A stretch of 64,000 nt of DNA from Macrostomum lignano. Lineage: Eukaryota. The notes under the pieces were generated by a model. It saw only the letters and a list, made by a program, of their open reading frames with translations. It had not been told where the DNA came from and ran no database searches. Position 1 is the first letter of the stretch. Each line of letters begins with the position of its first letter. Positions 4,141 to 24,000 of this stretch are shown one piece after another. The stretch is taken from the NCBI GenBank assembly GCA_002269645.1, contig NIVC01002104.1, positions 19,773 through 83,772 of the forward strand, in the 5' to 3' direction. The position numbers were made by a program, and so were the translations under genes.

Positions 4141-6995
4141 GCGCATTCTAATATAAGACTTAACTGTGAAATTTGAAATTTTAGGGAATAAAGGGAATAA
4201 TGAGAAATAATATTTTTACCAAATTATTAAGTCCACTCGTGCATGCCCTCAATGCAGTTGACGCTACTTAAATACGAAAATACGCAAAATACTAATAAAT
4301 ATTAATCTGAACGTGTGTCTAGATATCCAGACCTTAAGGGAATATGCACTACCTGGAATAGTGCATTATTCAATTATTCTTTTTGGCTTGTGTATCATAG
4401 ATAATATATAGTATTGCTACTCGTATTTATGGTTCATATATATTCATAAGTCCGCGGGCCCAGCCCAGTTGCTAGGGTTCACCCAAGCGGAGCAGGGCTA
4501 GAAGGATTCCCTCCACCATGCAGCCTCAGTCGCATGCCTGACTGACTGCATGGCGTGGCGTGAGGCCCTCCAATATAAAAGTGGGGCATTGAAAATCGCC
4601 ACAATGCCAAATATTTTTTTAAGAATAAGCCGCCGAGAAGCATCTTTGTGAGTCTGGGTCACGTTATCTACATCTTTGATGCGGAACTCTGTTGGAACTT
4701 TTAAAGAAAGTAAAGCTATTGTGTCGCGAGCTATTGTTGATGAAGGTAGTATTATCGCATCGTTCACTGTGCTCACTCAGTGTGATTCACTACATAGAGA
4801 GTGACTCATTCAGCGTGATTCACTATATGTAAGACTCTGTGTGAGACTCAGTTAGTGTGATTTTTCGTGTGTGATCCATCAGAGTGACTCATCGTGTGTG
4901 TGGTTCACTCGGTGTGTGTTTATTAGGATGCAATCTACTCACTCACTCATTCACTTATAGTGTGACTCTCACTCAGCAAGATTGCAGCCCGGACAGCATC
5001 CCACGGCTCATCCAGTTCCTTCGGGTGACAAGACGAGCCATTGTCTTCCCCACGGAAGATCACGCTGCAGGACGGACCGGCGGACCACCCTGACCGGCCC
5101 CCATGCCTCTGCCTGTCTGCTGGCCTTCAGGGGCTGGCGGAATGGGCGACCCTCGCCTCCCCGCTGTGTCTACGGACCACCCTGCAGCTGCAGCTGAGTC
5201 AAGTAAGTCAGCAAGATTGACTGTGCGTGGCTCACTTAAGAAGCTCGACTTATTCTTTGTCAAATTGAGTTGCCCCTGCTTCACTCATGACTCACAGAGC
5301 ATGGTTTGTGAATTGATAAACGTCACGTGATTGCCATACTTCAGACCAGAAGTTCATTATAATGCCTCTAGAAATTCAGGAAGCTCCCTGTGTTCCTTTC
5401 TCTTATAATTTCATTTCCAAGAAAAAAAGGACTGAGGGCGCGGCTTCAATCAAGGCGCAGACTTATTTTCTTCTGGCAGGCACAGCAGACAGGGAAAACT
5501 GCCTGCAGGCTATGTGGACAAGAAATGAAAATTTGTTGGCAATCAGAGATTGGCCCCCGAGGGGAAATGGCTCTCTGCTATCGCTAATGAGGCTGAAGCA
5601 GACTTCAGCATCTCAATTTTTCAAGCTAGTATAAATTCATCATTCCATATTCTGTATTATTTCTACAATAGTTTGATAACAAATACAGTTACGAATACTT
5701 TTTTATAATGTACCAAATCTTTGTAGAACTCTCCGGTATAGGCTAATCTCTATAAACTTACAGAAGCCGATCAAACAAGGTTTGTCAATCTTCAGCCTTA
5801 ACTCTACAAAAATTCAAACTCAAAGGCAAACCGCCTCACACTCGAGAGCTCACTACAAACGATTTTAGGCCCATAATTGAGTGTAAAAGAATTAAACTAA
5901 TAGACAATTATAGATAACTGACCTCAGTTCATGCGGTCTCTCCCTTCACAAAGCACTCAGATCGATGAATATATTATGAAAGCCAAAAAAGAAAGCTCAT
6001 TGACCTAAAAAGAAAAACAAGGGAAGCGAAACAGGCTATGATTCTAGAGATATGTATTTTGAGCAGAAGTGCAACTTCGATCGTTCTGCGATGAAGATCT
6101 TTATCGGTACCGGCTGTTTACACACATACTTGCAGTCTTCGGATGAGAATATACGATCGATATTGACGTTTTTTGTTTATCATCAGGCTATTAAAGCATT
6201 ACCACCTGTGTACAGGTACATCTCTAGCCATGTAAAATGGCTTGAGCTAGTGCTGCTGGAGCCAAATGCACTTCTATCCAACATCTATGCATGCATTGCA
6301 AAGATCGAAACAGCCAAGCTTTTATAGACACACGTCACACAATATTGCGTGTAGTTGCAGAACCTCACTCAAAACTGCAGTACAGCAAGTTATTCTACAT
6401 CCTTTTAGTTCCCTTTACCCAGACTCTCGGCCCATTAGCAGCAGCTGTGGCGCTGAACTCATCTTTTAACCGGACTCACGCGATTACGATCAATAAAAGG
6501 TAAACAGAAATTATGCTTCCTGCACGCGCGATGGTTATATTAAGTGATGGGTACAGATGCATATATATGCCGTACACTAATATCATCCACTTTAATTTAA
6601 CTCCGCGTGTATATATTTCTTAATTAATTTTCCCAACTCGCTCATTCTAAACACAATTAATTGACATGTACTTAAAAAAACTACTTACAGAACTCATGTA
6701 TTGTAATTATTATTTATTTGTAAATCATGCTTCTGGCCTATATATACTCGTAAGGTCAAAGCTGCACATGTTTGTAAAGTTATATTATGCTTCGATAACT
6801 TATAGGTGTAAGCATATAGCACGACTCCCGCCTCTCTACAAGAATGTTACGAGTACAAACCAAAGGATCACTGCACTAGGGCATACATAATTACATTAAT
6901 AGATCATCCATTACGTACTTGCCCTCATCCAGTGTAAAAGTGCGCTGTTGCTGTCACTTCAGGAGAGGACAATCACACATACATGTAAGTATAAG

Positions 6996-7355
6996 CAGGC
7001 GCGTCGCCACCGGGGGGACAGGGGGGACATGTTCCCCCCTGTAAAAACTATGGGGGACATGCCAATGCTTTGTCCCCCCACCCCATCTTGTGACTCGTTG
7101 TGCTAATCAATAATTTTTCTTCAGGGCGCCAAAATATAGCGCTTTCGGCGCCAAAATGAGTGCCTGCGTCGCTAAAATGAGTGCCTGCGTCGCTATAAAA
7201 GGAATGCCTGCGGTGCCAAAGTGAGTGATTGCGGCGCCAAAATGAGCGCTGACAAACACGATTCTCAAAATAATGGAAATGTAAAAAATTTAGTCATGTA
7301 CATGTTGAATTCTTGGCTTTGTCCCCCCACCATAAAATCCATGGCGACGCCCCTG
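6996..7355. mobile_element. hAT-type MITE, 360 bp, 14-bp TIRs, 8-bp TSD AGTATAAG
   Basis: Left end CAGGCGCGTCGCCA versus reverse complement of right end CAGGGGCGTCGCCA (1 mismatch). AGTATAAG at 6988-6995 and 7356-7363. Internal GGCGCCAAAAT-like repeats. CAG termini with an 8-bp TSD are typical of hAT. Confidence 0.85.
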
Positions 7356-8334
7356 AGTATAAGTCTTCAGGCCCCAGGCTTCAGGCACGTACTGATCCCG
7401 CGGAAAGGCCGGGATAGGGCGATAGCTACTTGAATAGGACGAAACGACGGCGCTTCGTCGACAGCTTGCTGGGTGATGCCCAGCAGCGCCCAAACTCTTG
7501 TTAAGCACTTAAACAGTAAGCCTTAAAAAAATAGTACTTTCAGCTCTTATAACCCTTTTAGATGTTTTAAGGTCTTATTCAGAGTGTTTAACGATTGTTT
7601 AACAATGTCTATTTTGGCGCAAATTTGAATCTAACGAAGGAAGCCAAGAAATTTTTCCAAATACATGCCCTATTATATATTGGCCAAACAGGCTAATTGC
7701 CTGAGCCAAATTCTTACTACTACTGAAACCTCAAGCCAGCACAATCATCATGGCTCTAGCCTCTTTGTGGCAAGGCAAATTAAGAGAAGGCCTAGACAAG
7801 AGTAAGGCAAAGCCCACATGAAAATATGTCTATTAGGCCTACTAATATTAATACTACTACTAGGCCTAACTATTACTATTACTTATATCCTTATTTATTG
7901 GGCAAATATTTATTTTCTGGACCTAATTAATAATGGCAGGTAATATTAATAAATTCAGGCAAACGCATAGCATATCGTATATATTATTTATTAGGCTAGG
8001 CCTAATTGTATTGTAGGGTAGGGCCCTGGCCTGGGTTTTTTTGCCAGAGACAAGGTGCGAAATCGCACCTTGTGCCAAATTTTAAGGTGCGATTTTAAGG
8101 CTCAGAGTGCAATTTCTCTTGAGTCTTATTTCAGACAACTGGGAATGTATATTTTAATATCTTAGATAAGGCTATAGTATAGCCATAGGCTATATGGCAT
8201 TCCTTCGGTTTACGATCATTTTTCCACCCACATTTCGGTTCACGATCCCCATGTAATTTTTCATATAAATGATCATAGCTTGCTTGAAATAAACAAAAAT
8301 TGTTAAACTGAGCTTAGGCCTATTCGTTACATTA

Positions 8335-9644
8335 CGAGGGTCACTCAGAAAGTTCTTAGCCTGAACACGAAAACAGCAACAAATGAACTAAAAAACGACT
8401 ACAAGTGCTCAAAATACTCTCCACCGGCATTGATACAGGCTTGCATCCTGTGAAACCAGCTGTCAAAGCACTGCCGCCAATCCTCATCCCGGAGCTCCTC
8501 GATGATGTTTTTGAACTCATTCACAGCTTCTTCCGGTGAAGAAAAGACCTGGCCCTTCAGAATCTCCTTGCACTTCGGAAACAGAAAAAAGTCGCACGGT
8601 GCCAGGTCTGGACTGTAAGCAGGGTGAGTCATCAGCTGGACCTCACAGTCAGCCAGAAACTCCAGAGTTTGAGCCGCCGTGTGCGCGCTGGCGTTGTCGT
8701 GGTGCAGCAGCACCCCGCGCATTCCGCACCTTGGGCGCCTCTGGCTCACAGCAGAAAAGACTTTGGGCAGGCAAACCGTTGTGTACCAGTCAGCGGTGAC
8801 TGTCTGGCGATCTTCAAGTGAAACGGAAGCCACATGCCCAGTGCGCATGAAGAAACAGGCCACCATCTGCTTGCCGACACTCCGGCTGCGTCGAAACTTG
8901 GTGGGGCTGTCCTCGTCTCCAAAGGTCCACATGGCTGACTGGCGCTTGCTTTCGGGGTCGTATTGATAAATCCAGGTCTCATCGCCAGTGAGGATGTCCC
9001 AGATACGCCGGCTGGTCCCAGATTCGAATTTCTGCAGCATGAATCGGCACCAAGCCACCCTGGTGTCCTTCTGCACGTCCGACAGCTGATGGGGGATCCA
9101 CCGGGAAGCCAGCTTCCGCACTCCAAGGTGTTCGTGCAGAATGGCGTGCACACTCCCCGATCCAATACCGATCTCCTGCTGGATCTGCTGGTAGGTCACT
9201 CGCCGGTCAGCGGCAATCATGCTGGTCACAGCGCAGATATTTTCTGGAGTCACTGCGTCACAGGGTCTCCCGGATCGATGTTCATCTTCGAGGCTTTCTC
9301 GACCTCGGCGAAACTCAGCGAACCAGTTTTTGACGGTTGCGTATGAAGGACATACATGAGTAAAAACGTTCTGTAAACTTTGATACGATTCGGCCGGCGA
9401 CTTGCCTTGCTTGAAGTGCAAGTACATCATTGCTCTGAAGTCGCGATTTTCCAGCTTCATTGTTGAATTGAAGAACTCAGGGGGTGAACTGACTTTAACT
9501 CGCTGCAGTGGACTCAAAAGTGGCTGCTTCTGTTTGAAATTTTTGTTGCAATACTTTTAAAAGTTGGTCTTTACCATAGACAAATTTCATGCTTCTACGT
9601 CTCGTGGATCCTACTCAGGCTAAAGACTTTCTGAGTGACCCTCG
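8335..9644 (-). mobile_element. Full-length mariner transposon, 1,310 bp, 30-bp TIRs, TA TSD
   Basis: TIR CGAGGGTCACTCAGAAAGTTCTTAGCCTGA versus right-end reverse complement with 2 mismatches. TA at 8333-8334 and 9645-9646. Confidence 0.95.
8399..9460 (-). CDS. Mariner DD34D transposase, 353 aa, intact
   Basis: ATG at 9460 (MKLENRDFR). Motifs WIPHQL, DETW, HHDNA and YSPDLAPCD, with 34 residues between the second and third catalytic Asp. No stops or frameshifts. Confidence 0.95.
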   Translation of the reverse strand: MKLENRDFRAMMYLHFKQGKSPAESYQSLQNVFTHVCPSYATVKNWFAEFRRGRESLEDEHRSGRPCDAVTPENICAVTSMIAADRRVTYQQIQQEIGIGSGSVHAILHEHLGVRKLASRWIPHQLSDVQKDTRVAWCRFMLQKFESGTSRRIWDILTGDETWIYQYDPESKRQSAMWTFGDEDSPTKFRRSRSVGKQMVACFFMRTGHVASVSLEDRQTVTADWYTTVCLPKVFSAVSQRRPRCGMRGVLLHHDNASAHTAAQTLEFLADCEVQLMTHPAYSPDLAPCDFFLFPKCKEILKGQVFSSPEEAVNEFKNIIEELRDEDWRQCFDSWFHRMQACINAGGEYFEHL

Positions 9645-12600
9645 TAGAAAGAACTGAACAGAATAGCCGACAAATGGTTTCTTCAATGGCATTGCGATGA
9701 CGAGGATCCTATATATCCACTTCGGTTCACGATCATTTACATGTATTTCTTCAATTTAAATGATCGTAAACCGAAGCTAAGGGGGGTGTCGAAGACATAT
9801 GTAGTCATATATTTATTTGTTGGCTTGTTGGCGATTGAAATGTCATCTTGAGTTAACGTGCGCTCCCAAGTAACTTGATGCTTTATTATTCTCTGCACGC
9901 TGCCACCCCCCCTCAGCTTCGGTTTACGATCATTTACATGTATTTCTTCAATTTAAATGATCGTGAACCGAAGCTAAGGGGGGTGTCGAAGACATATGTA
10001 GTCATATATTTATTTGTTGGCTTGTTGGCAATTGAAATGTCATCTTGAGTTAACCTGCGCTCCCAAGTAACTTGATGCTTTATTATTCTCTGCATGCTGC
10101 CACCCCCCCCCCCTTAGCTTCGGTTTACGATCATTTACATGTATTTCTTCAATTTAAATGATCGTGAACCGAAGCTAAGGGGGGGGGTGTCGAAGACATA
10201 TGTAGTCATATATTTATCAAGGACTACTTAAGAACACAGGATGTTACACTTGCAAATATTGGCAGAATTCTAAAAGGCTGCTTTGAATGCATGTGTCTAT
10301 GGTTTTAGTGGCCTTTTTGCTTAGTTATTATTATTATTGCTTTATTATTCTCTGCACGCTGCCACCCCCCCCCTCAGCTTCGGTTTACGATCATTTACAT
10401 GTATTTCTGCCATTTAAATGATCGTAAACCGAAGTGGATATATAGGATCGTCTTCATGGAACAGTTCTGAGACGTGAAATGGTACACTAAAACCCCCTAC
10501 CTTCGGTTCACGATCATTTACATGTATTTCTGCCATTTAAATGATTGTAAACCGAAGTGGATATATAGGATCCTCTGCATGGAACAGTTCTGAAATGAGT
10601 TCTATAACAAGCAACTCTTTCAATTTGATGAATGTATGCGAATGAACAGATCTCTTTGCATCGTTTCATTCTGGTTGGCATTCAATCGTTTGACGACAGA
10701 AAAATAAAAAGGCTTGGAGTGATTTCAGTGCTGGTTTAAAAAATGATTAAAAAACACGAATTTCTTACTCTTGCATATCTTTCTTATAGGGATCGTCACC
10801 AATTTCAGGGATCGTAAACCGAAGGAATGCCGGCTATATCGCCTATATGACTTAATAGGATTTAAAGAGTTATTTTGTTTCATATTTTAAGGCAGTGCAT
10901 GAAAAATAGCTTAAGCATGGTTAAGCCTTTAAAGAAAAATGGTTATAAGACTGCACCTAAACCGCACCTACTTTTTTAATTTCAGGGTGCAGTTTTAAAA
11001 TTCAAGGTGCATATGCACACTCTGTGCACAAAAAAACCCTGGTAGGGCCTATTGCATACATAAAGATAAAATTGTATTGCACCCTTTGCCTTTGACTTTG
11101 GCTTGGTCTAGAACATTTGTAATGGCCTAGGCCAATGCCTAGGCTAAATAAATATTGCTAGGCCCCCCTATGCTAAAAAATTATCATTATCATCAAACAT
11201 CCAAATATAGTTTCATAGACATAATCTAGTTTTATTTTTTGATACACAAAGTATACTTTGCAGCTATCTTTTTAATGTTTTAGGCTTAGTGCTTAGGCCC
11301 AGGGGGTTGACAGCTATTTTATCTGCTATAAAAGTACAATTGTTGCCAGTTTGTCTAAACTACTTTTGTTTGCTAAAATACAATAAGTAATAATGATATA
11401 ATATAGTCATTTTTTGCTATAAAATATTAAGTGACATTGTTATTGACATAAGGCCTAGTATTAATATGTTTATAATAATACAAGGCCAACTGTTCCTCTG
11501 GAGGAGAAAGGAGAAGAACTTCTATCACCAGAATTCCATTCTCTGAAATTAATCAGCTGAATCCCATGACCCAAATCCCATCATCCAACTTTTCTTCAAA
11601 TTCATCAAAATCCTCTCCATGAAACTAAACACCATCAAAATCCTTTATGCAAAACAGAAATCCTCTCCATGAAACTGAAGAATATCAAAATCCTCTCCAC
11701 AAAACTAGACTCAATCAAAATTTTCTCTGTCAAAAAGAATCAACTCTCAGGATTCATTTGTTAGGTTTAGGGTTAGGATTAAGGTTGGAGCTGCATAGAG
11801 CTGCATGTTAAAAGGGCCCAATAAAAATTGAGCTAATTGAATCAATAGATTGAGCAATTTAATTCTCAGTCAGTCAGTATCAGTCTCAGTTAAAGTTTAC
11901 AAAAAGATTGTGCAATCTAAATCAACCCTCTATTACATAACACCAACCCCCTTCCAATACGCAGTGGCAGATAGAAATTGAAACCCTGCCTAACTACTAG
12001 GAGGTTGGTTGAATGCCATTGAACCCCAAAATGAGTATAATCTGCAATAACATTAAAAGTATGGAAATTTTTTGTTGGATACTGTGCTTTTGGTTTTCAT
12101 ATTTTAAGTAAACAACTTATATCCTCAAACTCAGTGTTGCAAGATCTTTTCACCAATATAAGTCTCTTTTCTCAAATTATATAAATAAAAGAGTAGTTAG
12201 TGTTTGAAATTTCCCTATTTTTATCATTTTAATATTGAGTGTATATGCTCTGCTTACTAAAGAGGCTCGAAAGTTGATGCATTGAATTTCAATGTCCAAC
12301 AACTACACAGGGCTGCCTATTGAAAGGAAAAGTAAATAAATAGTAGCCATATCATTGCGCAATTATCTATACAGTCAGCTAGTGAGCCAGGGTCCAATTC
12401 ATCAAATTAGCCTATTTGTTGCATACAAAAATTCTGCATTGATATATATAAGTCCTGCATTTGAGTTGCTAGCCATCTAGGAAGAGATATGCATTAAACC
12501 TGGTCGATTGCTTGATCAATCCACTCAGCTTTATATATAAGATAGACCTAGTGATAGGCTCTATGTCTATGATAAAATAAGATAACATTGTATCATGTTT

Positions 12601-14560: not shown

Positions 14561-15089
14561 ATGTAGCACAGTATTGTAGCACTGTAGCTGAAAATTGAGT
14601 TTGGGTTGCTATGCGTCAGTCAATGGACTTTATATATCCTTGCACACAAAACCTGGAATCTTCCAGAAATTTCTGTTTAACCCAATAGAACTTTACTTTT
14701 TAAAGTATATAAAAAATGATTTGTCTTAGCTCCCTAGAAAAAATATAGTCATTCAATAATTCCAATCTTATTGGAATAAGTTAACATTTGGTAGACATCA
14801 TCTAGTATGCCTAGGAAAGTTGGTCTAGCTTATGTATATGCACATGCATGGATGTATATCTAAGATATAGAAATATCTGTGCATAGTGCTAGGGCAAAAG
14901 TGAATGTCACAAGCCTTGAGTGGGCTGAATTGCTGTTGTGAAGTTTCAAAAGACCCGAGGGCGGGATAGAGTGGCTTTGCAGGCTTAAGTTTTTCGACTT
15001 GAAAATTTGCAAAACAAAAAGTGACGTAACTCTACTAACAATTGATGCTTATAATAAACTAATCTAATAGCTCAAAATCATCATTGTGC

Positions 15090-18012
15090 ATGTTGGCAAT
15101 TTCCAGTCGTCAAGGCCTACTAATTGGCCGATTTTTGTCTAGAAATGCGACAACTGCTCGCCACCTAGCTAGCGTGCCTAGTGCCAGTTTCAATGGCACC
15201 AATGGAAGCAGTCAGAGTCGAGGTCCTCAATGGGCTTCGAAAGTGGCACTTGTTAGCGGTGGATTCTTAGCTGGCTGCTGTCTGACAGTCTGGCAGTTGA
15301 GACGTCAGCGCAGCTTCAGCGAGGCTGCAGGCAGTGGCGTGGCTTTGGCTGCCAGCGCTAACAGGCCGACCCCGCCAACTAGCGTCAACCACATCGCCGA
15401 TCTGGTGGAGCTGGTGTCTCCCACGGCAGTTAACATCCGGGTAGAGGGCAGCACGGCGCTGCACTCAATGCTTGGCATGCCCAGCTCGCAGGGCTCCGGG
15501 TTTATTATACGCGAGGATGGCCTTATTTTAACAAATGCTCACGTGGCTGGAAGGTTTAAGGTGAGAACGGAGTAACCTGCTGTTGCTTGTTGGTTACCTG
15601 TGAATCTGTTATTAAAAGTCTAGGTGAAATCTCTGTGTATGGGACACTATTGGCGCCATCTCTGACACTACTGGCGCCATATTTGACACTATTGGCGCCA
15701 TCTCTGATCTCTGACACTATTGGCGCCATCTCTGACACACTATTGGCGCCATCTTCGACACACTACTGGCGCCAACTTTGACACATTACTGGCGCCTTCT
15801 TTGACACACTACTGGCGCCATCTCTGAGATAATCGGCGCCATCTCTAACACACTATTGGCGCCATCTCTGGCACACTATTGGCGCCATCTCTGACACGCT
15901 ATCGGCGCCATCTCTAATACACTGTCGGCGCCGCTATCTTTGACACACTATTGGCGCCATCTCTGACAAACTATCGGCGCCATCTTTAACATAATCGGAG
16001 CAATCTCTGAGACATATCGGCGCCATCTCTGATACACTATTGGCGCCATCTTCGACACACTATTGGCGCCATCTCTGACACTATTGTCGGCATATTTGAC
16101 ACTATTGGCGCCATCTCTGACACTATTGGCGCCATCTCTGACACATTATTGGCGCCATCTCTGACACATTATTGGCGCCATCTCTGACACATAATTGTTG
16201 CCATATCTGACACTATTAACGCCATCTTTGACACTATTGGCGCCATCTCTGACACACTACTGGTGCCTTCTTTGACACACTACTGGCGCCATCTCTGAGA
16301 TAATCGGCGCCATCTCTAACACACTATTGGTGCCATCTCTGGCACACTATTGGCGCCATCTCTGACAAACTGTCGGCGCCATCTTTAAGATAATCGGAGC
16401 AATCTCTGACACGCGATTGGCGTCATCTCTGAGACAATCAGCGCCACTTTTATCTAATATATCGGTGATAATATCGGCGCTATTTTCTATCTTTCCAGAT
16501 CTAGTACAGAAAGTCTAGTATTGTTACTATAAAAAAGTACTTTATTACCATTATCAACGCAGGGCAGCCTGGTTGTCACCCTAACAGACGGTCGCGAGCT
16601 TCCCGCAGAGCTGATAGCCATAGACGCTGAGAGCGACATGGCTCTAGTGAAGGTGTCGGCTCGCGACCTTCCCGTGCTACCGTTGGGCCAGTCGAAGCGC
16701 TGCCGAGCTGGCGAATGGGTCATCGCGATTGGCTCTCCGCTGACCCTCAGCAACACGGTCACGGTTGGTATTCTCAGCAATACAGCCAGAAATTTGGGCA
16801 CCGGTAGCAATATTGAGTATCTGCAAACTGATGCCGCCATCACGTTTGGCAATTCTGGCGGGCCATTGGTGGATATGCATGGCCAGGTGAGCCCGGTATT
16901 TTTATTATTGCCTGGCACACTATTAGACCTGTTTAACACCTGTTAGACAGAAGCTATACCTGTTAGACAGAAGCTATACTTGTTAGACAGAAGCTATACT
17001 TGTTAGACAGAAGCTATACCTGTTAGACAGAAGCTATACTTGTTAGACAGAAGCTATACTTGTTAGACAGAAGCTATACCTGTTAGACAGAAGCTATACC
17101 TGTTAGACAGAAGCTATACCTGTTAGACAGAAGCTATACTTGTTAGACAGAAGCTATACTTGTTAGACAGAAGCTATACTTGTTAGACATAAGCTATACT
17201 TGTTAGACATAAGCTATACTTGTTAGACAGAAGCTATACTTGTTAGACAGAAGCCTCACCTGTTAGACAGAAGCCTCACCTGTTATGCAGAAGCCTCGCC
17301 TGTTAGACGGAAGCTTTACCTGTTAGACAGGAGCCTCACCTGTTAGACGGAAGCTTTACCTGTTAGACAGGAACCTCCCCTGTTAGACAGAAGCCTCACC
17401 TGTTACACAGAAGCCTCACCTGTTAGACAGAAGTCTTATCTGTTAGGCAGAAGCCTCACCTGTTAGACAGAAGCCTTATCTGTTAGGCAGAAGCTTTACC
17501 TGTTAGACAAAACCCTCAACTGTTAGACAGAAGCCTCACCTGTTAGACACAATTTCCACGCACTTTTACTGCAGGCGATCGGCATCAACACGCTGAAAGC
17601 GGACGCTGGCATCAGCTTCGCCATTCCCATCGACGAGGCGAAGAATTTCGTAGACCAGGCCCTGTCCACCTCTCGCCAAGTGATCAGCCGGCCTAAGGCC
17701 TACCTGGGCCTCACGCTGCTGTCGCTCAACCCCACCATCGCCAGGCGGGTCTTCGGTCGCGATGGCATTGACAAAGGCGTCCTGGTGCACTCGGTTCACC
17801 CGGACTCGCCAGCTCAGCGGGCCGGCCTGGCCAGTTATGACGTCATTCTGACTGCGGACGGCGAGTCGGTTCGTCGGGTGTCCGATCTGCACCGCGCTGT
17901 TGCCAAGGCAACGCAACGAGGCGGTGGTAAATCTGTGACTGTTCGATTGCTGGTGCTGCGGTCTGGGCGCGAGCTTCAGCTGGATGTGCAGCCAGAACTG
18001 CAGGGCGGATGA
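15090..18012 (+). CDS. HTRA2: HtrA2/Omi mitochondrial serine protease, about 410 aa; exons 15090-15560, 16563-16886, 17575-18012
   Basis: Arg/Ser-rich presequence, TM helix, catalytic triad in TNAHV, DAESDMAL and FGNSGGPL, then AIGINTLK..GISFAIP and a single C-terminal PDZ domain. GT-AG phase-0 junctions keep the frame. Confidence 0.9.
15640..16440. repeat. Degenerate about 21-24-bp minisatellite (GACACTATTGGCGCCATCTCT) in HTRA2 intron 1
   Basis: Tandem copies with a palindromic TGGCGCCA core. Confidence 0.9.
16938..17550. repeat. 20-bp minisatellite (TGTTAGACAGAAGCTATACC) in HTRA2 intron 2
   Basis: Clear 20-bp period; unit variants change from one end of the array to the other. Confidence 0.95.
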
Positions 18013-18519
18013 GCGGCTGGTGGCTTTGGCCAGGTTTAAAGCCATTGAGGAAATATTGAGTATCCGCTTCTGCCTGTCTTTACTGTGTCTTTGTGCCTGT
18101 GTGTCTGCCTGTCTGTCTGCTCTGTCTGTCTGCTCTGTCTGTCTGCTCTGTCTGTTAGTTTTCCTGTTGCAAATCTTACTGAAAGTCTGCCATTGTTTCA
18201 GAAGATAAAGGATGCGAAAGAAGAGCTAGACAAGCTTATCCAGCGATTTAGTGTGTTAATATGGCTAGTAGACCTGCCGTCTTTGATGCTTAGTTGAATA
18301 AAATGCAAGTATTGACTCCCAGCATCGCCTATTATTAGTTAATAAATAATTGTAATTAATTTTTTTGCGCTCATAGTTTAATGTGTAGATATAATGAAAA
18401 GTTACTTGCTTAGAGACCGTGAGAGAAGACACTGCATATTTCTAATGTATTCGTTTGAAATTTCAATTTCATTAAATAGTTCATACTTTTATTAGTCAAT
18501 GCAAATCAGGGACTTATTA

Positions 18520-19032
18520 GCAAATCCCAGATCCTCATAATTCAGATATTCAAATCCCAGATCCCCATAATTCAGCTATTCAAATCCCAGATCTCATAAT
18601 TTAGCTATTCAAATCCCAGATTCTCATAATTCAGCTATTCAAATCCCACATCCCCATAATTCGGTCATTTAAATCCCAGATCCCCATAATTCAGCTATTG
18701 AATTCCCAGATCCTCATAATTTAGCTATTCAAATCCCAGATCCTCATAATTTAGCTATTCAAATCCCAGATCCTCATAATTCAGCTATTGAAATCCCAGA
18801 TCCTCATAATTTAGCTATTCAAATCCCAGATCCTCATAATTTAGCTATTCAAATCCCAGATTCTCATAATTCAGCTATTCAAATCCCAGATCCTCATAAT
18901 TTAGCTATTCAAATCCCAGATCCCCATAATTCAGCTATTTACGCTCGTAAGTCCCAGATCCTCATAACTCAGCTATTCAAATCCCAGATCCCACAATTCA
19001 GCCATTCAAATCCCAGATCCTCATAATTCAGC
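18520..19032. repeat. 30-bp minisatellite (AAATCCCAGATCCTCATAATTCAGCTATTC)
   Basis: 30-bp period visible directly at 18721-18900. Confidence 0.95.
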
Positions 19033-19056
19033 TGAACTCCCAATTCCCCTTTCCAG

Positions 19057-19617
19057 GCGACTGCAGCTGTCCGGTCTCTGCTGCTCCTGTGCCTGCTGCT
19101 CCCAGCCAGCAGCTCGGCCGAGCAGAAGAAGCCGCTGTCCGAGTACTCTGACGCAGACTTGGAGCGACTCTACAAGCAGTGGGAAGAAAGCGATCCGGAC
19201 TCGGAGCCCGAGAGCACCAGCTGGAAGAGCCCACAGTTGGATCTAACCAAGGTGCCGGATTTGACAGATCCCACACTAATCCTGCAGCACTCCAGCCGTG
19301 GCCAGCCGGTGCCTCTGATTGTCCGCATCGCTGGAGCCGAGGGTCGCGACTCCGTATGGCTGGAGAATCTGTCGCGCAACTGGCAGCTGGAGATGTTCAA
19401 CGCTCACATGGAGACGACTAGGCGAGTTGTAGAAGACGGCACGGTGCAACTGATCGCTCTTGATGGCTCTCAGGTGGTGAAAGTGCGCGAATATTTGCTA
19501 GCCCAGCCTAACTGTTATTCTGTCACTATCGAGGGTCACACTGTACTCGGTAGGGGCGCTCCAGCTGCTGAAGTGGCCGCTGCCGCCGCTGCTAAGGCCA
19601 AGAAGACTGAACTATGA
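19057..19617 (+). CDS. MESD: MESD/Boca LDL-receptor-family ER chaperone, main exon; start codon not in this exon
   Basis: After the acceptor TTCCCCTTTCCAG the frame reads a signal peptide (ATAAVRSLLLLCLLLPASSSA), then SEYSDADLERLYKQWEE, which resembles the MESD DYNDADMARLLEQWE motif. Also WQLEMFN, DGSQVVKVREYLLAQPNCYSVTIEG and C-terminal KTEL (ER retention). Confidence 0.85.
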   Translation, partial: ATAAVRSLLLLCLLLPASSSAEQKKPLSEYSDADLERLYKQWEESDPDSEPESTSWKSPQLDLTKVPDLTDPTLILQHSSRGQPVPLIVRIAGAEGRDSVWLENLSRNWQLEMFNAHMETTRRVVEDGTVQLIALDGSQVVKVREYLLAQPNCYSVTIEGHTVLGRGAPAAEVAAAAAAKAKKTEL

Positions 19618-19829
19618 ACAGTAGTATAGTAGTGTTTACTTTGTATTTTTTTAAAAATGATTTCAACTTATTTTGTTATGTACACAATGAATTGTCTGCT
19701 TCAATCAATTTTTTAAATTACATGTAAATTCATTGTGCGATAACATTTTTTGTGTGATTTCCTTGTTCAAACTTTATAATATAGTAAAAGTTTTTTTCAA
19801 CAATATAAAGTACATTCATGTCTGTCCCC

Positions 19830-20500
19830 TCCTGAATGTACATTTACACCTCTACCCCCTCCAGGGTGTACATTCACAGCTCTACCCCTCAGAGTGTACA
19901 TTTACATCTCTACCCTCTCCCAGAGTGTACATTCACAGCTCTACCCTCTCCCAGAGTGTACATTTACAGCTCTACCCCCCAGAGTGTACATTTACAGCTC
20001 TACCCTCTCCCAGAGTGTACATTTACAGCTCTACCCCCCAGAGTGTACATTTACATCTCTACCCTCTCCCAGAGTGTACATTCACAGCTCTACCCTCTCC
20101 CAGAGTGTACATTTACATCTCTACCCTCTCCCAGAGTGTACATTCACAGCTCTACCCTCTCCCAGAGTGTACATTTACAGCTCTACCCCCTCCAGAGTGT
20201 ACATTTACAGCTCTACCCTCTCCCAGAGTGTACATTTACAGCTCTACCCCCTCCCAGAGTGTACATTTACAGCTCTACCCCCCAGAGTGTACATTTACAT
20301 CTCTACCCTCTCCCAGGGTGTACATTCACAGCTCTACCCTCTCCCAGAGTGTACATTTACATCTCTACCCTCTCCCAGAGTGTACATTCACAGCTCTACC
20401 CTCTCCCAGAGTGTACATTCACAGCTCTACCCTCTCCCAGAGTGTACATTTACAGCTCTACCCCCTCCAAAGTGTACATTCACAGCTCTACCCTCCAGTG
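19830..20500. repeat. About 30-31-bp minisatellite (CAGAGTGTACATTTACAGCTCTACCCTCTCC)
   Basis: Tandem array; it produces ORFs 19733-20540. Confidence 0.95.
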
Positions 20501-21097: not shown

Positions 21098-24000
21098 TTA
21101 ACTTGGCCTTGGCTTTACTTTATTGTACAGCACTATCTTCTTGTCTGCATAGCGGCTGCGGGAGGGTCGCTGCTGCTGCTGTTGCTGCTGCTGGAGCCGC
21201 TTGATTTCTGCCAACTGTTTGGGCGACAGTTTGGCCTCCCGTTCGGCGACACGCTGTGCCACCGATTCCGTCAGCTCTTTGAGCTCCGGAAAGTCGTCGA
21301 GATTGTCGATTAGCGGGATCAGCAGTGGCTCGATGCTTGGGTGCTTGCTGGCTGGAATTGAGCGATGCGGGTGAATTGAGACTGCATTCTTGATGGGCGG
21401 AGTGATAGACGGGAATGTACACTCGATTGGGATAGAGGGGCTGTATGTACATTCTTGATAGGTGGAGTGGTGATAGTGAAACTGTACACTCGATTGGGAT
21501 AGAGAGGCTGTATGTACATTCTTGATAGGCGGAGTGGTAGAGGGGATTGTAATATTCCTGCACGAAAACGAGACGCACGAGTTTGCGTGTAGGAAAATCA
21601 TTGTCTTTTGACCATAGACAAAGTCATTACTGCACGGTTTTCGAGAAACGTTAAGAAGAGATGAAAATTGAGTGGAGAGTTTATAGAAAAGTGTATAAAG
21701 CTTATTGACTATGGCGTCTGTAATCGACTCGGCTCTGAATCCTCCATTAATTGATTTTCGCTATGCTACGGTGTCTGGATTAATTGGCGACGAAATGTTT
21801 ATTGAAAGTGTGTCCAGCAACTTTGAGAGGACGGGCGACGATTTGACTGCACTGATAGCGGATTGCACGTTCAGCGAGGAATTAGAGAAACTTTTCAGCT
21901 CGGATCCGGAAACCTTGTGTAACCTTGACGAATTGGAAAGTCTGGCCGCTCAACTGGAACGCGACAACGAATGTCATTCGACTGTCTCTAAGGATAAAGC
22001 TGTGATCAACCGCTTGACGGCCTGGTTGGCGGAGAATAATTTAAAAGTGGATTACGCGACTGCTTCGGTGGAAGAAATTGCCAAATGGGTCCGCTACTTC
22101 TATGCGACTCTGCGTAAGTCAGACGGCAGCTTCTATTCGCCGAATACAATCGTAGGAATTCGAGCCGCACTGTTCAGGTACTTTATGAAATTACGTGGCC
22201 TCAATATCATCGCTCACGAGGCTTTTCATAGCGCGAAATTGATGGTGAAGAATGTTTGCAATGCGTATTTGAAGTCCGGTGGTCGAGTGCAGCATTACGA
22301 AGCCATTGAGTCGGACGACCTTGTCAAGCTTGCTTCTTACTTCGACAGAAGCACTCCAACACGTTTGCAAGAAGAGGTATATTTCAATGTGTTATTTTAT
22401 TTCGGCAATCGCGGCAGAGAATGGCTACGAGGTCTCACTGTTCGTTCATTCCGAGAGAAGGCCCTATCAAACGGAGCTATGGCGATCGAGTTGCAAGGCA
22501 GCACCTCAAAGAATGTAAAAGGCTCGAGTGACATGCGACTCTGCGACGACAATAAACAGGCCTTGATGGTGGCCAAGCCGGAGTCAAGGCACTGTCCAGT
22601 TCAGGCCTTCCAGCTTTATTTGTCGAAAATTACTGCCGTGCCGGGTTGGAATCAGGAGGACTTCTTTCTGCGTCCGAAACCACGAGTGAATGCGGATGGC
22701 ATCTGGTACACCAAAGTACCAGTTGGAATCAACACTTTGGGGCCGTTGCTCAAGAAGATCTCTTCGAATGCTAACCTTTCCAAGCTGTACACTCCGCATT
22801 GTGTGCGACCTACAGTTGTTACGGAGCTGCATGAAGCTGGCTTTTCTGTCGAAAAAATTGCGAAGGTGACAGGTCACAAGGTGAGCAATTCTTTATTCTT
22901 AGTAAGTTTATTGACACATGGACAAGGAATTTATTAAACACCACCTCTATTCACAGAATAGCGCGTCGGTAGAACGATACATTCGGAGAGGCAAGAAGAG
23001 GGACTCGATCATGGCAGGGATGAGTGATCAGCTGACAGTCGCTCTAGCTGGAACTATGCCGGCACCAAGTTCTACATTGAGCGAAGCTCCTGCAAGGGCT
23101 GTTACAACTACCGACCCGTGCGCCCTGAGCGACGCTCCTACAAGGGCTGTTGCGACTACCGACCCGTGCGGATCAGCGTCAATGTCAACTGTCAAGAAGT
23201 CACTGGTTGTTGAAGAATCGACCACCACACTTGTAGCAGCCCCACTAAGCGGATGAAGATTTTGGCAAACGGCGAAACGAATGTTGTGCAGTTTATTTTC
23301 GAGTAAATGCCGAGAGGGGTGTGAGTAGGTCTATAGACTCATTAACTGTTTCCCTAGTTCCACTTATTATCCTTTTTGTTCTTCCATATTGTTATTGATT
23401 ACATATTCAGTTGCTTCTAAAAATAAATTGTTAAATCGTGCAGGAATGAAGTCATTCCTGCACGATAAGCTAACGTATGTCAAGTGATTTCTACCATAGA
23501 CACAGACATTCCTGCACGATAATAAATCGAAAAAAATCATTCCTGCACGCTGTGGTCAAACGACAATGTACACTCGATTGGGATAGAAAGGCTGTATGTA
23601 CATTCTTGATAGGCGGAGTGGTGATTGTGAGACTGTATACTCGATTGGGATAGAGAGGCTGATGTACATTCTCGATAGGCGGAGTGGTAGATATCTCTAG
23701 GCGGAGTGGTAGATATCTCTAGGCGGAGTGGTAAATATCTCTAGGCGAGATATGTACACTGTAGTACATGTAGGAGGATAATTAAAAACTTTAAGGAACA
23801 AAATACAGTGTACATTGTTTTTATCGATGCAGGCAGTGGTGAGCACTATAGGGTTCTGATGCTCTCGGTTCTAGGAAATATAGATTTTTTATTCTTATCA
23901 ATTCGAATGAGATCATTCTTTGATTAAGCGTTTAATACTTCCGGGAAGTGAACTACAATTAATCAATCTATGAAAGCTTTTGAACTCCCACCCTTCCTAC

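What the first reader, a model, noticed from the sequence alone, without database searches (positions are those of the whole stretch)
18012..19617. HTRA2-MESD looks like a trans-spliced operon; MESD main exon has a signal peptide but no initiator Met
Seen: HTRA2 stops at 18012, with AATAAA at 18297-18302. MESD follows on the same strand about 1 kb later, and half the gap is minisatellite. Upstream of the strong acceptor at 19056 the MESD frame is closed (TGA 19033), and the first in-frame ATG is deep inside the domain. Established: flatworm spliced leaders end in AUG, and that AUG can initiate translation; operons are resolved by trans-splicing. Model A (inference): SL-AUG joined at 19057 gives M-ATAAVRSLLLLCLLL, an in-frame signal peptide. 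Model B: a T-rich acceptor at 18376, about 75 nt after the poly(A) signal, precedes a mini-exon (ATG 18394, donor 18419) spliced to the second AG (19066), giving MKSYLLRDPVRSLLLL. Splicing that mini-exon to the first AG is out of frame. Both models suggest a polycistronic unit with little room for a promoter.
Basis: partly seen in the sequence, partly recalled or inferred. Interest (0 to 1): 0.7.

Follow-up and report, generated by a model that had tools for sequence, protein, structure and literature searches.

The report
Spliced-leader start codon for flatworm MESD
In the flatworm Macrostomum lignano the chaperone gene MESD has no start codon of its own and most likely gets one from the ATG that ends the trans-spliced leader, probably as the second gene of an HTRA2-MESD operon; this is a textbook case of known flatworm biology, not a new mechanism.

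Summary
The window is Macrostomum lignano, assembly Mlig_3_7, contig NIVC01002104.1. MESD is a real, selected gene: Pfam Mesd E=5e-26, a signal peptide, a C-terminal KTEL, and copy differences that fall almost only on third codon positions. Its single coding exon opens directly after a TTCCAG acceptor with no usable ATG.

The published M. lignano spliced leader ends in ATG. Joined at 19057 it reads M-ATAAVRSLLLLCLLLPASSSA|EQKK, in frame. TTCCAG fits the published trans-splice motif [T/C]TNCAG.

GenBank names the second-copy genes BOX15_Mlig032997g1 (HTRA2) and g2 (MESD). By the authors' naming convention, that puts both in one RNA-seq transcriptional unit. The repeat-adjusted gap is about 180-530 nt, under the published 1-kb operon threshold.

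Model B is disfavoured:
- Such a candidate arises in 36% of random sequences.
- Its codons look non-coding.
- It must skip the first AG.
- Its ATG is ATA in a third copy whose MESD ORF is intact.

No SL-junction read could be inspected, so trans-splicing at 19057 remains an inference. This is a good instance of a known mechanism, and interest is low.

The parts
15090..15560 (+). HTRA2 coding exon 1. ATG at 15090, mitochondrial-presequence-like N-terminus, donor GTGAGA at 15561. TATAATAAA lies at 15050-15058 upstream.
   Evidence: GenBank's CDS (PAA60837.1, BOX15_Mlig011032g1, 'partial') starts at 15096.
16563..16886 (+). HTRA2 coding exon 2 (trypsin-like protease core).
   Evidence: An AG...GT exon of exactly the 108 codons needed to make the annotated 408 aa. 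Trypsin_2 E=1.7e-21. The rebuilt protein matches the GenBank record exactly.
17575..18012 (+). HTRA2 last coding exon (PDZ domain), with stop TGA at 18010-18012.
   Evidence: PDZ_2 E=1.2e-12.
18013..18346 (+). HTRA2 3'UTR with two AATAAA signals (18297-18302 and 18341-18346).
   Evidence: Conserved in all three copies apart from a TGTC microsatellite indel and a 20-bp deletion in L003.
18347..18520 (+). Unique AT-rich spacer.
   Evidence: The codon log-likelihood is -5.4 bits, i.e. non-coding-like. The ATG is ATA in copy L003.
18521..19033 (+). 30-bp minisatellite with unit CAAATCCCAGATCCTCATAATTCAGCTATT, 16.9 copies here. It accounts for the length differences of the spacer between copies.
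   Evidence: TRF. There are 24.2 copies in L001 and 42.9 in L003. L001 also carries an LTR retrotransposon inside it.
19033..19035 (+). In-frame TGA that closes the MESD frame 21 nt upstream of the acceptor.
19036..19056 (+). Pyrimidine tract plus the TTCCAG 3' splice acceptor. This is the proposed SL trans-splice site; the exon starts at 19057.
   Evidence: 75% pyrimidine in positions -22 to -3. Matches the published trans-splice motif [T/C]TNCAG. Identical in all three copies.
19061..19066 (+). Second acceptor, CTGCAG, 10 nt downstream. SL-AUG joined here is out of frame. Model B needs this site.
   Evidence: SL at 19067 gives an unrelated 60-codon ORF.
19057..19119 (+). Signal-peptide codons ATAAVRSLLLLCLLLPASSSA. 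With the SL Met this makes a 22-aa signal peptide; the predicted cleavage is SSA|EQ.
   Evidence: Hydropathy peak of 3.1 over SLLLLCLLL. The N-terminal length before KKPLSxY equals that of homolog P0043.
19057..19617 (+). The single MESD coding exon: Mesd domain at residues 24-170, C-terminal KTEL ER-retention signal, stop TGA at 19615-19617.
   Evidence: Pfam PF10185 E=5.4e-26. 98 homologs at E<=1e-3. Differences between copies are 5 of 6 and 7 of 7 at third codon positions.

Best explanation
MESD in Macrostomum lignano is made from a single coding exon (19057-19617) that is SL trans-spliced at the TTCCAG|G acceptor. The 35-nt spliced leader (...TTGCATG) supplies the cap, the 5'UTR and the initiator AUG. 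The product is MATAAVRSLLLLCLLLPASSSA|EQKK...KTEL, an ER-targeted and ER-retained LRP chaperone.

The pre-mRNA most likely starts at the HTRA2 promoter. That makes HTRA2-MESD a two-gene operon resolved by 3'-end formation after AATAAA (18297 or 18341) and by SL addition at 19057. The minisatellite is a neutral, length-variable filler of the spacer.

Shown:
- the anatomy;
- the frame compatibility;
- that the ORF is under selection;
- that the species' SL ends in ATG (literature);
- that the authors' annotation places both genes in one transcriptional unit in one copy.

Inferred:
- that SL is actually joined at 19057;
- that the SL AUG is the start used;
- that the two genes share one primary transcript in vivo.
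For: (1) Species and SL. The proteins map to M. lignano GCA_002269645.1. Its SL is CGGTCTCTTACTGCGAAGACTCAATTTATTGCATG. [quoted passage not shown]

(2) SL AUG as start codon. The terminal ATG of the Macrostomum SL is described as a likely translation start codon (PMC10468722). All reported flatworm SLs end in AUG. In S. mansoni more than 40 cDNAs need that AUG (Cheng 2006, as cited).

(3) Frame. SL-ATG joined at 19057 is in frame, whereas joined at 19067 it is not. The frame is closed upstream by TGA 19033. No ATG occurs in any frame from 19000 to 19355, and the first in-frame Met is residue 113.

(4) Acceptor. TTCCAG fits [T/C]TNCAG. Only three such motifs occur in 18013-19120.

(5) Protein length. 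M plus 23 residues before KKPLSEY equals the N-terminal length of the closest homolog P0043.

(6) Public annotation. Although built from RNA-seq, it found no upstream exon, and the CDS is '5' partial' in both annotated copies.

(7) Operon.
- L001 HTRA2 is BOX15_Mlig032997g1 and L001 MESD is BOX15_Mlig032997g2, with consecutive accessions.
- The genes are on the same strand with nothing called between them.
- The stop-to-acceptor gap minus repeats is 505-531 nt in all three copies, or about 180-240 nt from the poly(A) signals. That is under the published 1-kb criterion.
Against: - No read, EST or cDNA carrying the SL joined to 19057 could be retrieved. The exact M+exon protein is not in the protein collection.
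- The annotated CDS begins at 19081 (equivalent to 19078 in L001), not at 19057. So the public gene boundary is not visibly an SL-site cut.
- A consensus donor, GTGAGA, lies upstream at 18419. On a read-through transcript it could pair in cis with the acceptor.
- The one copy that shows a shared transcriptional unit (L001) has a 4.4-kb retrotransposon in the spacer. Multi-mapped reads from that element could have bridged the two genes artificially.
- The name of the window's own MESD record is hidden, and the third copy's MESD is not annotated at all.
- In-frame SL-AUG alone has a 1-in-3 chance expectation.
- The SL AUG has U at -3, a weak context.
Confidence: 0.6

Rival explanations
1. MESD is SL trans-spliced at 19057 and uses the SL AUG, but it has its own promoter in the AT-rich spacer or minisatellite. 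It would be a monocistronic gene with an outron, and HTRA2-MESD would not be an operon.
For: By the published criteria, about 60% of SL trans-spliced M. lignano genes are not in operons. About 200 nt of unique AT-rich DNA containing TATAAT (18389-18394) lies upstream. The spacer tolerates a 4.4-kb retrotransposon and a 0.5 to 1.3 kb change in minisatellite length, which is easier to reconcile with a promoter close to the gene, or with any upstream transcription being sufficient. The published distance distribution for non-trans-spliced to trans-spliced gene pairs is unimodal, with no operon peak.
Against: The authors' annotation gives HTRA2 and MESD one transcriptional-unit prefix in copy L001. 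The repeat-adjusted distance is short. No promoter evidence could be obtained.
Confidence: 0.2
2. A 25-nt coding mini-exon (ATG 18394 to 18418) is cis-spliced from the GTGAGA donor to the second acceptor (19066), giving MKSYLLRDPVRSLLLL.
For: The donor matches the species' GT[G/A]AG consensus and CTGCAG matches [T/C]TNCAG. The product is in frame and still has a plausible signal peptide.
Against: - 36% of composition-matched random sequences contain at least one ATG...GTRAG exon in phase with one of the two acceptors.
- The seven mini-exon codons score -5.4 bits, coding versus non-coding. That is lower than every 7-codon window of the HTRA2 and MESD CDS. GC is 29%, against 59% in the CDS.
- Splicing must skip the stronger first AG, and use of that AG gives a frameshift.
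- In copy L003 the ATG is ATA, while the MESD ORF is intact and differs only at third codon positions.
- The RNA-seq-based annotation did not assemble this exon.
- An SL added at 18377 would place its AUG on a 4-codon uORF, MFNV*.
Confidence: 0.07
3. An unrecognised cis-spliced 5' exon elsewhere supplies the ATG. It could lie inside the minisatellite, upstream of HTRA2, or in sequence missing from the assembly. The 'partial' annotation would then simply be an incomplete model.
For: The annotated 5' ends are imprecise, lying 21-24 nt inside the exon. Repeat-rich regions are known to break M. lignano transcript assemblies. Only a Met and a few residues are missing, so homology cannot locate such an exon.
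Against: Nine ATG..GT candidates exist in the gap, but only Model B has a consensus donor. All three copies lack any such annotated exon. The SL explanation needs no extra element.
Confidence: 0.1
4. The MESD exon is a 5'-truncated, non-functional gene fragment.
For: There is no initiator in the genome. One copy (L003) is not annotated.
Against: The 186-codon ORF is intact in three copies. 5 of 6 and 7 of 7 differences fall at third codon positions. Pooled with the HTRA2 last exon, 8 of 10 window-versus-L001 differences are at third positions (binomial p=0.003). The signal peptide, Mesd domain and KTEL are all complete.
Confidence: 0.03

Closest known systems
Flatworm SL 3'-terminal AUG used as initiator methionine (Cheng, Cohen, Ndegwa & Davis 2006 J Biol Chem; 'slORFs', PMC9851317)
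   Same: The SL ends in AUG. The acceptor sits directly at the first sense codon, the SL AUG is in frame, and no other initiator is available. This matches the >40 S. mansoni cDNAs reported to need the SL AUG.
   Different: The case here is in the free-living Macrostomum lignano and is not confirmed by cDNA. The supplied Met begins a cleavable ER signal peptide.
M. lignano SL trans-splicing and operons (Wudarski 2017 PMC5730564; Ustyantsev & Berezikov 2021 PMC8629364)
   Same: The 35-nt SL and the [T/C]TNCAG acceptor match. The two genes are adjacent on one strand. The spacer is inflated by tandem repeats and a transposon, and its repeat-adjusted length is under 1 kb. The g1/g2 naming indicates one transcriptional unit.
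   Different: This particular gene pair is not described in any searchable paper. The first gene appears to have its own TATA-like promoter, so it would belong to the 18% of operons that start with a non-trans-spliced gene.
C. elegans SL2-type operons
   Same: A downstream gene is trans-spliced a short distance after the upstream gene's poly(A) signal.
   Different: M. lignano has one SL type and no SL2 specialisation. The raw spacer here is 0.75-5.5 kb rather than about 100 nt. The nematode SL carries no AUG.
MESD / Boca LRP chaperone family (Pfam PF10185)
   Same: The domain, the N-terminal signal peptide, the KKxxxDY[ST]DADLERLY start of the mature protein and the C-terminal xxEL ER-retention signal all match the homologs.
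   Different: Only 35-37% identical to the nearest relatives. The initiator Met is not genome-encoded next to the ORF.

Membership tests
SL trans-spliced mRNA that uses the flatworm SL 3'-AUG as initiator | The organism has an SL RNA whose leader ends in AUG. | tested here: met
   The organism was identified as M. lignano. The published SL ends ...TTGCATG. The SL gene itself is not in the window.
SL trans-spliced mRNA that uses the flatworm SL 3'-AUG as initiator | A 3' splice acceptor lies at the 5' edge of the first coding exon, with the SL AUG in frame and no alternative in-frame AUG. | tested here: met
   TTCCAG|G ends at 19056. SL-ATG plus 19057 reads the MESD frame. TGA at 19033 closes the frame upstream, and the first in-frame ATG is codon 113.
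SL trans-spliced mRNA that uses the flatworm SL 3'-AUG as initiator | No functional cis donor upstream on the pre-mRNA (the outron condition, Conrad 1993). | tested here: inconclusive
   Two GT[GA]AG pentamers lie in the gap, at 18419 and 18947. About 1-2 are expected by chance, and their use cannot be judged without RNA data.
SL trans-spliced mRNA that uses the flatworm SL 3'-AUG as initiator | cDNA or reads carrying the SL joined to the exon. | not testable with these tools
   No M. lignano transcript data are reachable. The exact M+exon protein is not on record, and supplement searches were empty.
M. lignano operon (criteria of Ustyantsev & Berezikov 2021) | Adjacent genes on the same strand with no opposite-strand gene between them. 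| tested here: met
   Gene calls in L001 and L002. The ORF list shows only antisense shadows of the exons.
M. lignano operon (criteria of Ustyantsev & Berezikov 2021) | Repeat-adjusted intergenic distance under 1 kb. | tested here: met
   The stop-to-acceptor gap is 1044, 5791 and 1800 nt in the three copies. Minus the minisatellite and the retrotransposon it is 531, about 505 and 506 nt.
M. lignano operon (criteria of Ustyantsev & Berezikov 2021) | The downstream gene is experimentally SL trans-spliced. | not testable with these tools
M. lignano operon (criteria of Ustyantsev & Berezikov 2021) | Both genes lie in one RNA-seq transcriptional unit (precursor). | tested here: met
   Met for copy L001 only, through the locus tags Mlig032997g1 and g2 plus the naming convention. 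The window copy's MESD tag is hidden. Caveat: a retrotransposon lies in that copy's spacer.
MESD/Boca chaperone | Mesd domain. | tested here: met
   PF10185, E=5.4e-26, 91.8 bits against a cut-off of 24.4.
MESD/Boca chaperone | N-terminal signal peptide and C-terminal ER-retention tetrapeptide. | tested here: met
   The h-region SLLLLCLLL has hydropathy 3.1, with SSA|E at positions -3 and -1. KTEL compares with KNEL, KKEL, KSEL, KQEL and RDEL in homologs. No dedicated signal-peptide predictor was available.
HtrA2/Omi serine protease | Trypsin-like protease domain followed by a PDZ domain. | tested here: met
   Trypsin_2 E=1.7e-21 and PDZ_2 E=1.2e-12. Homologs are named HTRA2.

The most novel reading that the evidence does not exclude
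Because the SL supplies cap, 5'UTR and AUG, MESD expression would need only some upstream sense transcription. That would make the spacer a 'free zone', which is why it differs between genomic copies by 17, 24 or 43 minisatellite units and by a 4.4-kb LTR retrotransposon while the ORF stays under purifying selection. By extension, a sizeable share of the '5' partial' proteins in the GenBank M. lignano annotation would really be complete proteins whose Met is SL-encoded. That would be a systematic, correctable annotation gap.
Probability: 0.35. Interest if true: 0.35.

Novelty: new member of a known kind. Interest (0 to 1): 0.2.

Why it matters
The main value is for annotation. GenBank lists this MESD and its HTRA2 neighbour as 'hypothetical protein, partial'. 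Recognising the SL-encoded Met turns the MESD record into a complete secretory-pathway protein. It also gives a simple rule for re-examining other 5'-partial M. lignano models: a YTNCAG acceptor, an in-frame ORF and no ATG.

The locus is also a compact test case in a transgenesis-capable flatworm. It could show whether an SL AUG can drive a signal peptide, and whether operon spacers tolerate kilobases of repeats. It does not reveal a new mechanism.

Tried and rejected
Searches that found nothing useful:
- Direct transcript evidence. The MESD search found only the two GenBank copies plus distant homologs. The exact 'M+exon' protein is not on record.
- Supplements of four papers hold no MESD, HTRA2 or Mlig032997 entry. 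No paper mentions the three locus prefixes.
- The SL sequence is absent from the window, and Rfam finds nothing there.

A planned survey of other 5'-partial M. lignano genes failed:
- The mariner ORF has no annotated M. lignano copies.
- Two other window ORFs are not on record.
- The HTRA2 exon search did not return the M. lignano protein, so I rebuilt the protein from its exons instead.

Ideas rejected:
- I first suspected the g1/g2 suffix numbered gene copies rather than genes within a unit. Unrelated genes share the prefix, and Suppl. Fig. 5a of PMC5730564 states the convention.
- Acceptors downstream of 19066 are all out of frame and would delete the signal peptide.
- CUG initiation at 19078 would lose the n-region of the signal peptide.

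The window-versus-L001 comparison is uninformative for Model A versus B, because the copies are too similar. Only L003 discriminates.

One search displayed the L001 spacer before I knew it held a retrotransposon. I did not extract, assemble or characterise that element further.


Full report
**Identity of the window**

The MESD exon protein matches a GenBank protein of Macrostomum lignano at 100%. That protein lies on contig NIVC01002104.1 of assembly GCA_002269645.1 (Mlig_3_7). A second copy, PAA56096.1 'BOX15_Mlig032997g2, partial', lies on NIVC01002664.1. Window coordinate equals L002 coordinate plus 9080.

**Observation**

Reading 17400-20400 and a script check confirm every coordinate.
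- The HTRA2 stop is at 18010-12.
- AATAAA is at 18297-302, with a second one at 18341-46.
- The 30-bp minisatellite spans 18521-19033: 16.9 copies, 513 of the 1044 gap bases.
- The in-frame TGA is at 19033.
- The acceptors are TTCCAG|G (ending 19056) and CTGCAG|C (ending 19066).
- The ORF runs 19057-19617.
- The first in-frame ATG is at 19393, residue 113, and no ATG occurs in any frame from 19000 to 19355.
- The mini-exon runs 18394-18418, followed by a GTGAGA donor.

The HTRA2 exons are 15090-15560, 16563-16886 and 17575-18012. The rebuilt 408-aa protein is an exact match to GenBank PAA60837.1.

**The gene is real and under selection**

- Pfam Mesd scores E=5.4e-26, and an exhaustive HMMER search finds 98 family members.
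- The homologs begin with M, then about 23 residues of signal peptide, then KKxxxDY[ST]DADLERLY, and they end in xxEL.
- The flatworm exon has the hydrophobic core SLLLLCLLL, an SSA|EQ cleavage motif, KKPLSEYSDADLERLY and KTEL. Only the Met is missing.
- Three genomic copies (window, L001, L003) share an identical acceptor region. Their MESD exons differ at 6 and 7 sites, of which 5 and 7 are third codon positions. Pooling MESD and the HTRA2 last exon, 8 of 10 window-versus-L001 differences are at third positions (binomial p=0.003).

**What the literature says about this species**

- The M. lignano SL is CGGTCTCTTACTGCGAAGACTCAATTTATTGCATG. [quoted passage not shown]
- The enriched motif at trans-splice acceptors is [T/C]TNCAG.
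[quoted passage not shown] An operon is called when the repeat-subtracted distance is under 1 kb, including when only the downstream gene is trans-spliced (PMC8629364).
- All reported flatworm SLs end in ATG. Cheng et al. 2006 showed that this AUG can initiate translation, is in frame in 28% of S. mansoni trans-spliced mRNAs, and is required by more than 40 cDNAs (as cited in PMC12582326 and PMC9851317).

**Model A**

SL-ATG joined at 19057 reads MATAAVRSLLLLCLLLPASSSAEQKK..., which is in frame. Joined at 19067 it gives an unrelated 60-codon ORF. TTCCAG fits the motif and follows a 75% pyrimidine tract. Only three YTNCAG motifs occur in 18013-19120. The N-terminal length with the SL Met, 24 residues before KKPLS, equals that of the nearest homolog. 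The public annotation was built from RNA-seq with STAR, StringTie and a de novo assembly. It found no upstream exon and marks the CDS as 5' partial in both annotated copies.

**Model B**

Four observations count against it.
- Chance. Of nine ATG..GT exons in phase with either acceptor, only this one has a consensus donor. But 36% of Markov-1 random sequences of the same composition contain at least one such candidate.
- Composition. The seven codons score -5.4 bits, coding versus non-coding, below every 7-codon window of the 596 real codons.
- Splicing logic. It needs the second AG, and the first AG gives a frameshift.
- Comparative. In the third copy, L003, the ATG is ATA, while the MESD ORF is intact and differs only at third positions.

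**Operon**

L001's HTRA2 is PAA56095.1, BOX15_Mlig032997g1, and its MESD is PAA56096.1, BOX15_Mlig032997g2. The authors state that assembled transcripts are 'transcriptional units' which the TBONE pipeline cuts into genes using SL and poly(A) evidence. [quoted passage not shown] Two unrelated genes sharing a prefix therefore means one transcriptional unit.

The stop-to-acceptor gap is 1044, 5791 and 1800 nt in the three copies. After removing the minisatellite (16.9, 24.2 and 42.9 units) and, in L001, an LTR retrotransposon, it is 505-531 nt in all three. Measured from the poly(A) signals it is about 180-240 nt.

Caveats:
- The copy that shows the shared unit is the one with the retrotransposon, and multi-mapped reads could have bridged the two genes.
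- The window's MESD tag is hidden.
- L003's MESD is not annotated.
- A promoter could fit in the 200-nt AT-rich spacer.

**Unresolved details**

- The GenBank MESD CDS starts 21-24 nt inside the exon, not at an acceptor.
- The HTRA2 CDS is also '5' partial'. It starts just after the triplet at 15090, which is ATG in the window and in L003 but CTG in L001. The preceding GCATG equals the SL's last five bases, so over-trimming of an SL-like 5' end is one possible cause.
- In both annotated contigs the two genes' annotated 5' ends lie at a similar offset, about 20-25 nt, downstream of an AG (15070 and 19056). I treat this as a weak hint only.

**Verdict**

The best explanation is SL trans-splicing at 19057 with the SL AUG as initiator (about 0.75 on its own), probably within an HTRA2-MESD operon (about 0.6 for the combined statement). 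It is a new, well-behaved instance of mechanisms already described for flatworms and for this species. The practical consequence is a correctable annotation gap. Interest is low.

Noticed in passing
L001 about 5400-9899 (second genomic copy; equivalent to inside the window's minisatellite 18521-19033): A roughly 4.4-kb LTR retrotransposon (gag-pol-like ORFs on the + strand) is inserted in the minisatellite between HTRA2 and MESD. Its LTRs share a 127-bp exact block, and CAAAT flanks both ends. It is absent from the window and from L003, so the insertion is recent. I did not extract or characterise the element further.
   Followed up: partly
window 15086-15096; L001 1230-1238; L003 9994-10003: The HTRA2 initiator differs between copies: TGCATG in the window, AGCATG in L003 and AGCCTG (no ATG) in L001. 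GenBank marks all three HTRA2 CDSs as 5' partial, starting just after this triplet. GCATG equals the last 5 nt of the spliced leader, so this may be an SL-trimming artefact. Copy L001 may truly lack a start codon.
   Followed up: partly
window 15050-15058 and 15065-15071: A TATAATAAA box lies about 40 nt upstream of the HTRA2 ATG, and an AATAG|C acceptor ends at 15070. An SL added there would be out of frame (MLKIII...), so HTRA2 is probably promoter-driven and the first gene of the unit.
   Followed up: no
window 18196-18297: The only other YTNCAG in the gap (TTTCAG, ending at 18201) lies in the HTRA2 3'UTR. SL-AUG joined there would open a 32-codon ORF, MKIKDAKEELDKLIQRFSVLIWLVDLPSLMLS. Its TGA overlaps the AATAAA at 18297. 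This is probably chance (about 15-20% for an open frame of that length). L003 has a 20-bp deletion just upstream of it.
   Followed up: partly
window 19072-19079 (+) and 18412-18419 (-): The 8-mer CGGTCTCT, identical to SL nucleotides 1-8, sits 15 nt inside the MESD exon. Its reverse complement forms the 3' end of the Model-B mini-exon. There are three occurrences in the window against one expected, and 9% of shuffles reach that count. This is likely coincidence.
   Followed up: partly
window 15640-16446, 16938-17549, 19837-20495; L003 13973-15266: Minisatellites with units of 20-31 bp fill both HTRA2 introns and the region just after MESD. The intergenic 30-mer array varies between 17, 24 and 43 copies among the three genomic copies. 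Arrays like this also fill the neighbouring introns and flanks.
   Followed up: partly
L003 15290-15850 (contig NIVC01002013.1): A third, intact MESD copy has 7 differences, all at third codon positions, and a C-terminus of NTEL instead of KTEL. It is not annotated as a gene in GenBank, although its HTRA2 neighbour (BOX15_Mlig008974g1) is.
   Followed up: partly
window 8399-9517 (-): An intact-looking mariner/Mos1-type transposase ORF (HTH_48 E=1.5e-11, Transposase_1, DDE_3). The nearest database relatives are only 65% identical, and none is annotated in M. lignano.
   Followed up: partly
window 21711-23256 (+): A DUF3504 plus phage-integrase-like (tyrosine recombinase, Crypton-like) gene lies about 2 kb downstream of MESD on the same strand. 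It is annotated in both L001 and L002.
   Followed up: no
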